From positions 124,001 to 188,000 of the IMG/VR virus record IMGVR_UViG_3300035698_007246: 64,000 nucleotides of DNA, one strand, 5' to 3'. Positions 17,273-17,607 of this stretch are shown here, in pieces. Positions within the stretch are counted from its first letter, which is position 1; every line of letters begins with the position of its first letter. Made by a program: the position numbers and the translations under genes. The notes below the pieces were generated by a model. That model ran no database searches and was not told the origin of the DNA. It saw only the letters and a list, made by a program, of their open reading frames with translations.

Positions 17273-17607
17273 ATATTCTTTACAAATTAACTGTCCCTTG
17301 AATCGAGACTAATCTCCCCTAAGCACTCACTGCTAAATTCCCCCAATTGAATATTATCCCATAAATAAAGATTTATTTAAAATCATCAGTTTTCTCCCCT
17401 CATACTTTTTTATGCTTTCACAGTATGTTAAACAGTAACCCTTAATCACACTACTAAAGCCCCGGAGGTATTCACATCATTTGAAATTAATACTTTATTG
17501 AAATAATACCCAATTGGGAGAGTTCGGATTCGAACCAAACACACTATTTCCATAGTCAGGGTTTTACTTTAGATATTAATTGCTGTATTCAATCTTCAAA
17601 AGAACAT
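17273..17607 (-). ncRNA. clamp element B with permuted tRNA mimic and about 150-nt structured linker
   Basis: P1 ATGTTCTTT/AAAGAATAT; T arm TTTGG-TTCGAAT-CCGAA; acceptor CTCTCCCAATTG/CAATTGGGGGAA. Confidence 0.7.

What the first reader, a model, noticed from the sequence alone, without database searches (positions are those of the whole stretch)
17273..17607. Clamp B: permuted tRNA mimic whose acceptor stem is capped by an approximately 150-nt structured domain
It has the same inside-out topology as A. CCCTGA/TCAAGGG acts as the anticodon stem, ACTAT-GGAA-ATAGT as the variable arm, and the T arm is canonical. The acceptor CTCTCCCAATTG/CAATTGGGGGAA encloses a long AT-rich paired insert. This resembles two-piece tmRNA logic but lacks G3:U70 and an obvious tag ORF.
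Basis: partly seen in the sequence, partly recalled or inferred. Interest (0 to 1): 0.68.

Follow-up and report, generated by a model that had tools for sequence, protein, structure and literature searches.

The report
Phage Y-RNA-like tRNA mimic, expanded arm
The feature is a real, structured phage RNA gene that mimics a tRNA turned inside out, and it belongs to a previously undescribed, widespread family of RNAs encoded next to a divergent Ro60-like protein, so it is best read as a new kind of phage Y RNA.

Summary
On the minus strand, 17609-17271 encodes a 339-nt RNA ordered as variable arm, T arm, acceptor 3' strand, 161-nt insert, acceptor 5' strand, D arm. An orthologue in another metagenome (L122) keeps the insert. 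All 85 predicted pairs hold there, six through compensatory changes, two of them in the long-range acceptor stem.

Element B is not a tmRNA. It is one of nine paralogues in the window, and 46 unique copies were found in 14 loci. All share one scaffold: a variable closing stem, a bulged U, G:U/A.G/A:U/G:Y, a compensated helix, and an invariant UnCAGCAA junction. The payload varies: a permuted tRNA-like module, a tRNA lacking its acceptor stem, an anticodon-like hairpin, a whole tRNA, or an A/U hairpin.

About 0.4 kb beyond the window edge, on the same strand, the phage encodes a DUF2828/DUF7788 protein. Its predicted fold matches Ro60 over the full length. RtcB lies 6.5 kb further on. In 27 other phage loci, a model built from this scaffold hits within 1 kb of the orthologous gene. 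These include Escherichia phage garuso (Felixounavirus) and a mycobacteriophage.

Best reading: a YrlA-type Y RNA with a new Ro-binding-like module. Protein binding and expression are untested.

The parts
17271..17609 (-). Element B, whole unit (339 nt): scaffold plus permuted tRNA-like payload with expanded acceptor arm
17599..17609 (-). Closing stem, 5' strand AAAUGUUCUUU; pairs with 17281-17271
   Evidence: 11 bp; the sequence differs in every family copy
17589..17598 (-). Bulged U plus core 5' strand GAAGAUUGA
   Evidence: U bulge in 44/46 copies; G1:U, A2.G, A3:U invariant or nearly so
17580..17588 (-). Junction motif AUACAGCAA (nUnCAGCAA)
   Evidence: U, C, G, C, A invariant in 46/46 copies; kept in Felixounavirus and mycobacteriophage copies
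17558..17561 (-). CCCU, 3' strand of the anticodon-stem-like helix; pairs with GGGG at 17316-17319
   Evidence: RNAalifold columns 51-54/295-298, U:G to U:A in L122; 5 C with 5 G in L007
17543..17556 (-). Variable-arm hairpin ACUAU-GGAA-AUAGU
   Evidence: compensated in L007 (ACUGC-GAGA-GCAGU)
17523..17539 (-). T arm UUUGG-UUCGAAU-CCGAA
17511..17522 (-). Acceptor-like stem, 3' strand CUCUCCCAAUUG
   Evidence: Pairs with 17338-17349; compensatory U:A to C:G and A:U to G:C in L122
17350..17510 (-). 161-nt insert capping the acceptor stem: extension helix (17510-17473 with 17389-17350) and apical domain (17472-17390)
   Evidence: Conserved in L122 with 3 further compensatory pairs. Absent in L007, which has a roughly 16-bp hairpin instead. 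DNA contigs of two salt-lake runs span it unchanged
17473..17484 (-). Box-C-like strand UCAAAUGAUGUG of a putative kink-turn; partner CUGAUGA at 17383-17389
   Evidence: Inference from the sequences: tandem G.A/A.G, then U.U (C.C in L122), then G:C. This explains the weak C/D snoRNA hits
17338..17349 (-). Acceptor-like stem, 5' strand CAAUUGGGGGAA
17320..17335 (-). D arm UAGC-AGUGAGU-GCUUA (no GG in the loop)
17293..17316 (-). GGGG (stem partner of CCCU) followed by 3' hairpins GAGA-UUAG-UCUC and GUCUC-GAUUCAA-GGGAC
   Evidence: columns 306-310/320-324; U:G/C:G swapped in L122
17282..17290 (-). Core 3' strand UUAAUUUGU
17271..17281 (-). Closing stem, 3' strand AAAGAAUAUUU
17117..17260 (-). Paralogue A: same scaffold, permuted tRNA-like payload
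   Evidence: R1 103.8 bits (in training set); Rfam YrlA 19.3 bits
18802..18947 (-). Paralogue F: same scaffold enclosing an ordinary tRNA (ARAGORN tRNA-Leu CAA, 18833-18906)
   Evidence: R1 44.2 bits; the anticodon differs among orthologues
20267..20448 (-). Paralogue D: scaffold with a T-loop hairpin and a GGAG-loop hairpin
   Evidence: orthologues L007:537-749 and L129:2946-3121
21222..21408 (-). Paralogue E: permuted tRNA-like payload with a 19-bp acceptor hairpin
   Evidence: R1 68.4 bits, E = 1e-13; Rfam YrlA 30.7 bits
21643..21781 (-). Paralogue C: permuted tRNA-like payload with a 7-bp acceptor hairpin and 9-nt loop
   Evidence: Rfam YrlA 36.7 bits, E = 5e-5; alignment A3
21885..21965 (-). 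Paralogue with an anticodon-like stem-loop payload only
   Evidence: R1 42.6 bits
22103..22308 (-). Variant paralogue (core GAAGGCUGA/UCAGCCUGA, junction CAGCAG) with a 166-nt non-tRNA payload
   Evidence: not found by R1
22438..22530 (-). Paralogue with a short non-tRNA payload
   Evidence: R1 50.4 bits

Best explanation
Element B is a non-coding RNA gene of a deep-branching T4-like phage from salt-lake metagenomes. It is built like a bacterial YrlA-type Y RNA. The 5' and 3' ends pair into a long stem that carries a conserved module: a bulged U, then G:U, A.G, A:U, G:Y, and an invariant UnCAGCAA junction. The apical part is a tRNA mimic in the order T arm, closed acceptor-like stem, D arm. 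In B the acceptor-like stem is extended and capped by a conserved 161-nt domain that probably contains a kink-turn. Inferred mechanism: the conserved stem module is the docking site for the phage's own Ro60-like protein (DUF2828/DUF7788), encoded at the downstream end of the same tRNA/ncRNA cluster near RtcB. The tRNA-like module, and in B the extra domain, would recruit or occupy a tRNA-recognising partner such as an exoribonuclease, an RNA-repair enzyme or a tRNA-targeting host factor, as Y RNA does in the Ro60-Y RNA-PNPase complex. Shown here: the RNA structure and its covariation, the paralogous family, the Ro60-like fold of the neighbouring protein, and the co-location of family RNAs with that gene across phages. 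Inferred: expression, protein binding and the effector.
For: Structure of B. RNAalifold of B against L122 gives 85 pairs, 0 broken and 6 compensatory. RNAfold z = -4.27.

Family. There are 9 copies in the window and 46 unique copies in 14 loci. The invariant features are U bulge 44/46, A.G 46/46, A:U 46/46 and UnCAGCAA. In the 13-sequence alignment A3, 98.4% of cells are paired against 71.6% in shuffles and 34-47% when partners are slid. 24 of 30 pairs carry compensatory changes, with 0/500 shuffles reaching that. None of 53 chance pattern matches in bacterial and archaeal genomes passes the scaffold test.

Y-RNA likeness. Rfam YrlA hits the tRNA-like modules of C (36.7 bits, E = 5e-5), E (30.7) and A (19.3) in the same T, acceptor hairpin, D order. 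That architecture is described in PMC4201824.

Partner protein. A 485-aa DUF2828+DUF7788 protein lies 0.4-1.8 kb beyond window position 1 on the same strand, and RtcB lies 6.5 kb further. Its AF2 model has pLDDT 87.8 and pTM 0.87. The top 13 PDB matches are all Ro60, including 1YVR (E = 4e-9, TM 0.61), D. radiodurans Rsr and Thermus phage Ro60. A DxSxS MIDAS motif is invariant. Orthologues in mycobacteriophage records are annotated 'Ro-like RNA binding protein'.

Co-location. Model R1 was searched over 77 phage loci centred on orthologues of that gene. All 82 hits are on the gene's strand. Of 55 full-length hits, 41 lie within 1 kb of the gene, in 27 of the 31 loci with hits. The same holds in Escherichia phage garuso (64.6 bits, E = 1e-13, plus three shorter units, in the tRNA array that follows the gene) and in Mycobacterium phage Rumpelstiltskin (43 bits, about 100 nt after gp54). 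It also holds in L123.
Against: There is no expression or binding data: no RNA run holds the region. The published Ro60-contact motif GNCGAAN0-1G/CGAA is not present as such. The family has U-GAAG, with CGAAG in one copy (L242), A-GAAG in garuso and GUGG in the mycobacteriophage. Rfam YrlA scores stay below the gathering score of 69. In this phage B lies about 17.7 kb from the Ro60-like gene, inside the tRNA array, not next to it. Some payloads, such as whole tRNAs, tRNAs without an acceptor stem, anticodon-like hairpins and A/U hairpins, have no precedent among Y RNAs. The Ro60 assignment rests on a predicted structure, and Pfam TROVE does not match. The co-location test used loci chosen around the gene, with only the +/-10 kb flanks as background.
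Confidence: 0.7

Rival explanations
1. Processing or stability cassette, possibly a decoy, with no Ro60 role. The closing stem plus core would be a recognition or cleavage site (RNase III-like or a phage endoribonuclease) that excises and protects small RNAs from the long tRNA-operon transcript. The displayed tRNA parts would act as decoys for host tRNA-targeting nucleases or tRNA-modifying enzymes.
For: The units sit inside polycistronic tRNA arrays, some right after sigma70-like promoters. An ordinary tRNA (F) and isolated anticodon-like hairpins are displayed on the same scaffold. The anticodon of the F-type tRNA differs among orthologues: CAA, ACA, UGA. In this phage the units are not adjacent to the Ro60-like gene.
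Against: It does not explain why family members sit within 1 kb of the Ro60-like gene, on its strand, in 27 other phage loci, including phages whose unit is not inside a tRNA array, such as Rumpelstiltskin. Invariant single-stranded and mismatch positions point to a specific binder rather than generic double-stranded RNA. The two readings are not mutually exclusive.
Confidence: 0.2
2. Two-piece tmRNA-like or split aminoacylatable tRNA. The insert would be excised, CCA added, and the two base-paired pieces charged and used on the ribosome.
For: The gene order T arm, acceptor 3' strand, intervening segment, acceptor 5' strand is that of permuted tmRNA genes. A neighbouring element at 21452-21517 matches the beta-proteobacterial tmRNA model locally (40.1 bits, E = 1e-9) and carries CCA. 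M. smegmatis YrlA is cut by RNase P and receives CCA (PMC4201824).
Against: B has no CCA and no conserved discriminator. G3:U70 is absent in B and not conserved. No ORF is conserved in the insert. ARAGORN finds no tmRNA. The acceptor helix continues without interruption into a conserved, compensated extension. Only about 50 nt follow the D arm, with no room for a message.
Confidence: 0.04
3. Decaying or rearranged tRNA genes (the 3' half of one tRNA next to the 5' half of the next), or a MITE-like DNA repeat with no RNA function.
For: The region is dense in tRNA genes and HNH endonuclease genes. A lone tRNA 5' fragment follows A.
Against: Compensatory changes occur in every helix, and G:U pairs fit only the tRNA strand. 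Distinct unit types (B, C, D, E, F) are kept as orthologues in several phages. The terminal stems differ in every copy, unlike transposon inverted repeats.
Confidence: 0.03

Closest known systems
YrlA-type bacterial and phage Y RNAs (Rfam RF02553; Chen et al. 2014, PMC4201824), partners of Ro60/Rsr
   Same: The terminal stem is made by the 5' and 3' ends and carries a conserved purine-rich 5'-strand motif after a bulged pyrimidine. The apical tRNA mimic runs T arm, closed acceptor-like stem-loop, D arm, with an optional variable arm. Several paralogues are clustered. They are encoded with a Ro60-fold protein and RtcB. Some known YrlA RNAs also have longer acceptor stems.
   Different: The conserved module is U-GAAG/CUGU plus UnCAGCAA, not GNCGAAN0-1G. 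Rfam YrlA scores are 19-37 bits against a gathering score of 69. The partner is a DUF2828/DUF7788 protein that Pfam TROVE does not recognise. There are nine copies per genome, embedded in a tRNA array. The payloads are interchangeable and include whole tRNAs and anticodon-like hairpins. B carries a 161-nt domain on the acceptor arm.
Two-piece (circularly permuted) tmRNA
   Same: The gene order is T arm, acceptor 3' strand, intervening segment, acceptor 5' strand. The anticodon arm is replaced by a long helix.
   Different: B has no CCA, no conserved G3:U70, no tag reading frame, no pseudoknots, and no evidence that the insert is removed.
Thermus phage phiLo Ro60 with Yrl1/Yrl2 (PMC12135203)
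   Same: A phage-encoded Ro60-fold protein has Y-like RNAs encoded beside it. The phiLo Ro60 structures are among the fold matches.
   Different: The phiLo RNAs were defined by a CGAA motif in a stem-bulge-stem and are not described as tRNA-like. The protein is a recognised Ro60 homologue.
T4 stable RNAs C and D (rnaC, rnaD) in the T4 tRNA cluster
   Same: They are small stable RNAs of unknown function inside a T4-type tRNA cluster, and rnaC ends in a T-arm-like hairpin.
   Different: They lack the GAAG...CAGCAA...CUGU scaffold.

Membership tests
Y RNA / YrlA | Long stem formed by pairing of the 5' and 3' ends of the RNA | tested here: met
   11-bp closing stem plus 9-position core in B. In A3 all 7 closing-stem pairs show compensatory changes.
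Y RNA / YrlA | tRNA-like domain in the order (V), T arm, acceptor-like stem-loop, D arm | tested here: met
   partial Rfam YrlA matches to C, E and A
Y RNA / YrlA | Ro60-contact motif GNCGAAN0-1G (CGAA) near the 5' end | tested here: inconclusive
   The family has a bulged U followed by GAAG in 44/46 copies. CGAAG occurs in one relative (L242), A-GAAG in garuso and GUGG in a mycobacteriophage. It resembles the motif but is not the published one.
Y RNA / YrlA | Encoded next to a Ro60 orthologue | tested here: met
   Met at family level: 41 of 55 model hits lie within 1 kb of the DUF2828-type Ro60-fold gene, in 27 loci. It also holds in garuso, Rumpelstiltskin and L123. For B itself the gene is about 17.7 kb downstream on the same strand, just outside the window.
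Y RNA / YrlA | Score at or above the Rfam RF02553 gathering threshold (69 bits) | tested here: not met
   B: no hit at E <= 10. A 19.3, E 30.7 and C 36.7 bits.
Y RNA / YrlA | Physical association with Ro60 protein | not testable with these tools
   Needs EMSA or immunoprecipitation; no RNA runs are available.
Ro60/TROVE protein (the proposed partner) | HEAT-like ring plus C-terminal vWA domain with a MIDAS motif | tested here: met
   The AF2 model matches Ro60 chains over the full length (TM about 0.6, E = 4e-9 to 4e-5, top 13 hits). Invariant D275-x-S277-x-S279. Pfam TROVE itself does not match.
Two-piece tmRNA | Acceptor end with CCA and G3:U70 | tested here: not met
   No CCA follows the 3' strand. 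B has G3:C70 and G4:U69, while L122 has G3:U70, so the pair is not conserved.
Two-piece tmRNA | Tag reading frame with a resume codon; detection by ARAGORN or Rfam tmRNA models | tested here: not met
   There is no conserved ORF in the insert (5 against 12 codons). ARAGORN and Rfam give no tmRNA call at B.
Permuted tRNA genes (Cyanidioschyzon type) | Ends that form an anticodon stem-loop with a bulge-helix-bulge motif, allowing circularisation into a decoding tRNA | tested here: not met
   There is only a 4-bp stem, no anticodon loop and no BHB. The scaffold occupies that position.

The most novel reading that the evidence does not exclude
DUF2828-type Ro60 homologues, present in at least 693 cultured phage genomes, work with a dedicated and so far unannotated class of Y-like RNAs. 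A common protein-docking scaffold in these RNAs displays interchangeable tRNA parts: a permuted tRNA elbow, a tRNA without an acceptor stem, an anticodon arm, a whole tRNA, or, in B, an extra kink-turn domain. Together with RtcB this would form a phage RNP toolkit that repairs, shields or counterfeits tRNAs during the conflict with host tRNA-targeting defences.
Probability: 0.4. Interest if true: 0.85.

Novelty: new variant of a known kind. Interest (0 to 1): 0.75.

Why it matters
Y RNAs and Ro60 are well known in animals and in a few bacteria, but their roles in phages are barely explored. This analysis ties an unannotated RNA family to a large 'domain of unknown function' protein family (more than 4000 homologues) that has the Ro60 fold. 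It shows that the RNAs sit beside that gene in T4-like, Felix O1-like and mycobacterial phages. It also shows that one scaffold carries many different tRNA-derived modules. The system can be tested directly in laboratory E. coli phages. It assigns a probable function to DUF2828/DUF7788, and it may explain part of the 'dark' intergenic sequence in phage tRNA arrays.

Tried and rejected
- ARAGORN, including its tmRNA mode, and Rfam at gathering scores call nothing at B. At E <= 10, Rfam gives only noise-level C/D snoRNA and CRISPR-repeat hits at B.
- T4 rnaC and rnaD were read as possible relatives. They lack the scaffold.
- blastn of 16000-19000 against 50,697 phage records found no match.
- The first single-motif scan of viral contigs gave mostly chance single hits.
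- The genome-contig scan gave 53 hits, all chance.
- The protein-based locus search with the adjacent ATP-grasp gene returned only the source contig.
- Sequencing runs hold the region only as DNA contigs from salt-lake metagenomes. They gave no RNA ends, no joints at B and no variant lacking the insert.
- Pfam and PHROG searches of the flanking small ORFs, including the syntenic 142-aa ORF 17909-18337, gave nothing.
- No TROVE-like ORF lies inside the window.
- One contig look-up failed because the ORF start was wrongly chosen.
- Two look-ups returned gene tables without DNA.
- The three-way alignment of B, L122 and L007 misaligned the short orthologue, so the pairwise alignment was used.
- A hammerhead reading of CUGAUGA in the insert was rejected because U4 is C in L122.
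- A kink-turn reading of the scaffold core was rejected because the bulge is only 1 nt and G1:U replaces G.A.
- Literature searches found no description of the scaffold or of a DUF2828 link to Y RNA.

Full report
**Context.** The window is contig positions 124,001-188,000 of IMGVR_UViG_3300035698_007246 (223,879 bp). It is a distant T4-like phage. It carries gp32, gp43, gp44, gp41, UvsX, RNase H and gp46 homologues, and its DNA polymerase is at most 33% identical to any cultured phage. The region is held in salt-lake metagenomes. ARAGORN finds 27 tRNA genes, all on the minus strand between 1.8 and 26.6 kb. Rfam adds a few more.

**The observation.** Read on the minus strand, the stretch contains these elements in order:
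- a variable-arm hairpin ACUAU-GGAA-AUAGU
- a canonical T arm
- CUCUCCCAAUUG
- 161 nt of insert
- CAAUUGGGGGAA
- a D arm

RNAfold gives -89.1 kcal/mol, z = -4.27, with no shuffle as stable. Neither ARAGORN nor Rfam at its gathering scores calls anything here.

**B is one member of a repeated scaffold.** A 21-nt motif upstream of both A and B recurs in the window. Reading each copy showed one architecture:
- a closing stem of 5-23 bp whose sequence differs in every copy
- a one-nucleotide 5' bulge
- G1:U, A2.G, A3:U, G4:Y
- five further pairs that vary with compensation
- the junction nUnCAGCAA
- a payload of 25-296 nt
- the 3' strand ...CUGU and the closing stem

Nine copies lie between 17.1 and 22.5 kb of the window. 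Scans of viral and metagenome contigs, followed by a structural filter, gave 46 unique copies in 14 loci. Across them:
- The bulge is U in 44 of 46.
- A.G and A:U are invariant.
- U, C, G, C, A of the junction are invariant.

As a control, none of 53 pattern matches in bacterial and archaeal genomes had a compensated core plus a closing stem. G:U pairs fit only the tRNA-coding strand, so the structure is at the RNA level.

**Payloads.** Five kinds occur:
- About half are permuted tRNA-like modules: T arm, 7-bp or longer acceptor hairpin, two nucleotides, D arm.
- Some are a D arm, anticodon arm and T arm with no acceptor stem.
- Some are an anticodon-like hairpin alone.
- Some are a whole tRNA. 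Window unit F encloses the tRNA at 18833-18906, and its anticodon differs among orthologues.
- Some are A/U hairpins.

For 13 permuted members, RNAalifold predicts 30 pairs, 24 of them with compensatory changes. 98.4% of cells are paired, against 71.6% in shuffles and 34-47% when partners are slid. No shuffle of 500 reaches the observed values. A covariance model (R1) built from these 13 finds the remaining window copies. These include E (68 bits), F (44) and B (35.6 bits, E = 4e-6, 5' part only because of the insert).

**B and its insert.**
- L122:2909-3254 (Ga0180432) is an orthologue that keeps the large insert.
- L007:4755-4964 is an orthologue with only a roughly 16-bp hairpin cap.
- B against L122 gives 85 pairs, none broken. 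Six are compensatory: two in the acceptor stem, two in its extension and two in the apical domain. A further 15 are one-sided consistent changes.
- The anticodon-like stem is CCCU/GGGG next to the D arm.
- The insert's extension helix ends in box-C-like (AUGAUG) and box-D-like (CUGA) strands. These can form a kink-turn, kept in L122 with U.U changed to C.C. This is my inference from the sequences, and it explains the weak snoRNA hits.
- No ORF is conserved in the insert.
- DNA contigs of two independent runs span the insert unchanged, and no shorter variant was seen.

**What it is like.** With permissive thresholds, Rfam's YrlA (Y RNA-like) model matches the tRNA-like modules of C (36.7 bits, E = 5e-5), E (30.7) and A (19.3). 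The order of elements is the same, but the scores are below the gathering score of 69. YrlA RNAs are Ro60 partners with a terminal stem, a 5' GNCGAAN0-1G motif and a T, acceptor-like, D tRNA mimic. They are encoded next to rsr, including in phages (PMC4201824; PMC12135203; PMC7824862).

**The partner.** No TROVE-like ORF lies inside the window. A contig extending past the left edge (L209) shows two relevant genes on the tRNA strand (position confirmed by L211):
- a 485-aa DUF2828+DUF7788 protein, 0.4-1.8 kb beyond window position 1
- RtcB, 6.5 kb further

With a 30-sequence alignment, the AlphaFold2 model has pLDDT 87.8 and pTM 0.87. Foldseek against the PDB returns only Ro60 structures as the top 13 hits. 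These are Xenopus 1YVR (E = 4e-9, TM 0.61/0.58), human Ro60, D. radiodurans Rsr and Thermus phage phiLo Ro60. vWA/MIDAS domains follow. D-x-S-x-S is invariant. The DUF2828-RtcB linkage recurs in two other contigs.

**Co-location.** Eighty viral loci centred on orthologues (30-52% identity) were fetched.
- R1 gave 82 hits at E <= 0.01 in 77 loci, all on the gene's strand.
- Of 55 non-duplicate full-length hits, 41 lie within 1 kb of the gene, in 27 of the 31 loci with hits.
- Their sequences keep (Y)GAAG...nUnCAGCAA...CUGU, and one has CGAAG.

The protein occurs in 693 cultured phage records. Orthologues in mycobacteriophages are annotated 'Ro-like RNA binding protein'.
- In Escherichia phage garuso (Felixounavirus), the gene is followed directly by the tRNA array. 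That array contains four unannotated scaffold units, one of them a permuted tRNA mimic at 64.6 bits, E = 1e-13.
- In Mycobacterium phage Rumpelstiltskin, three tandem units follow gp54. The middle one scores 43 bits, whereas Rfam YrlA finds nothing.
- L123 shows two units just upstream of the gene.

**Conclusion.** It is not a tmRNA relative. It is a member of a Y RNA-like family that partners, by genomic association, with a divergent Ro60-fold protein.

Relative to known YrlA, four things differ:
- the docking module
- the protein family
- the expansion to nine paralogues inside a tRNA array
- the modular payloads

B in addition carries a conserved 161-nt domain on the acceptor arm.

Expression, ends, protein binding and the effector remain untested. 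The association test used loci chosen around the gene, and the scaffold statistics come from copies selected partly by pairing, so the independent controls carry the weight. Those controls are the chance matches, the slid partners and the model hits to untrained copies. I found no paper describing the scaffold or linking DUF2828 to Y RNAs. That search covers only the held library.

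Noticed in passing
window 21431-21539 (minus strand; core 21452-21517): T arm, AUCCCCC-ACCA, 26-nt loop, GGGGGAU. It matches the Rfam beta-proteobacterial tmRNA model locally (40.1 bits, E = 1e-9) and tmRNA_permuted (27 bits), including the intervening loop. It has G3:C70, no convincing tag, and only about 55 nt before the next unit. It is a permuted tmRNA-like remnant or another tRNA mimic.
   Followed up: partly
about 0.4-1.8 kb beyond window position 1 (L209:3695-5152; contig 122,162-123,616), and L209:11699 onward: A DUF2828/DUF7788 protein with a predicted Ro60 fold, and an RtcB RNA ligase, lie on the tRNA strand just outside the window.
   Followed up: yes
window 17080-17112 (minus strand): A lone tRNA 5' fragment (CGCUGGU-GU-GGCUC-AACUGGUA-GAGC) lies directly after unit A. 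It runs into the Shine-Dalgarno sequence and start codon of ORF 16717-17064.
   Followed up: no
window 13981-13997, 14170-14186, 19465-19481, 19669-19685, 24461-24477 (minus strand): Well-formed T-arm hairpins that belong to no tRNA called by ARAGORN or Rfam and to no GAAG scaffold. They may be further tRNA-like elements.
   Followed up: no
window 9485-9560 (minus strand): tRNA with anticodon CUA, which ARAGORN labels 'Pyl'. It is a potential amber suppressor.
   Followed up: no
window 10359-10721 (minus strand): A 120-aa minimal nucleotidyltransferase (Pfam Polbeta/NTP_transf_2) lies inside the tRNA region.
   Followed up: no
window 17589-17834 (minus strand): The 81-aa ORF upstream of B ends with the UGA inside B's GAAGAUUGA core, so its last seven codons overlap B's closing stem.
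   Followed up: no
window 17909-18337 (minus strand); L007:4358-4726; L031:313-648; L028:13648-13986: A 142-aa Cys-containing protein with no family match is conserved next to scaffold units, directly upstream of the B orthologue in L007.
   Followed up: partly
L122:2269-2910; L011:348-1361; L031:1987-3210: Related phages carry RNA-end enzymes and a mobile element beside their scaffold units. These are an Rv2179c-like 3'-5' exoribonuclease abutting the B orthologue, a Thg1-like tRNA-His guanylyltransferase, and a TnpB (IS605 OrfB).
   Followed up: partly
window 13548-13570, 21975-22016, 24148-24189, 24397-24446, 24604-24653, 25599-25641 (minus strand): A repeated strong sigma70-type promoter (TTGACA, 17 nt, TATATT/TATAAT) precedes tRNA and scaffold-RNA transcription units.
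   Followed up: no
L207:4433-7045 (about 2-4.5 kb beyond the window's right edge): A UvsW-like helicase carries an intein-type insertion (Pfam Hom_end_hint).
   Followed up: no
L294:3007-3858 (Escherichia phage garuso MN850566, 60006-60857): Four unannotated scaffold RNAs lie between annotated tRNA genes of a cultured Felixounavirus. Their core variant is A-GAAGACC.../...GGUCUG.
   Followed up: yes
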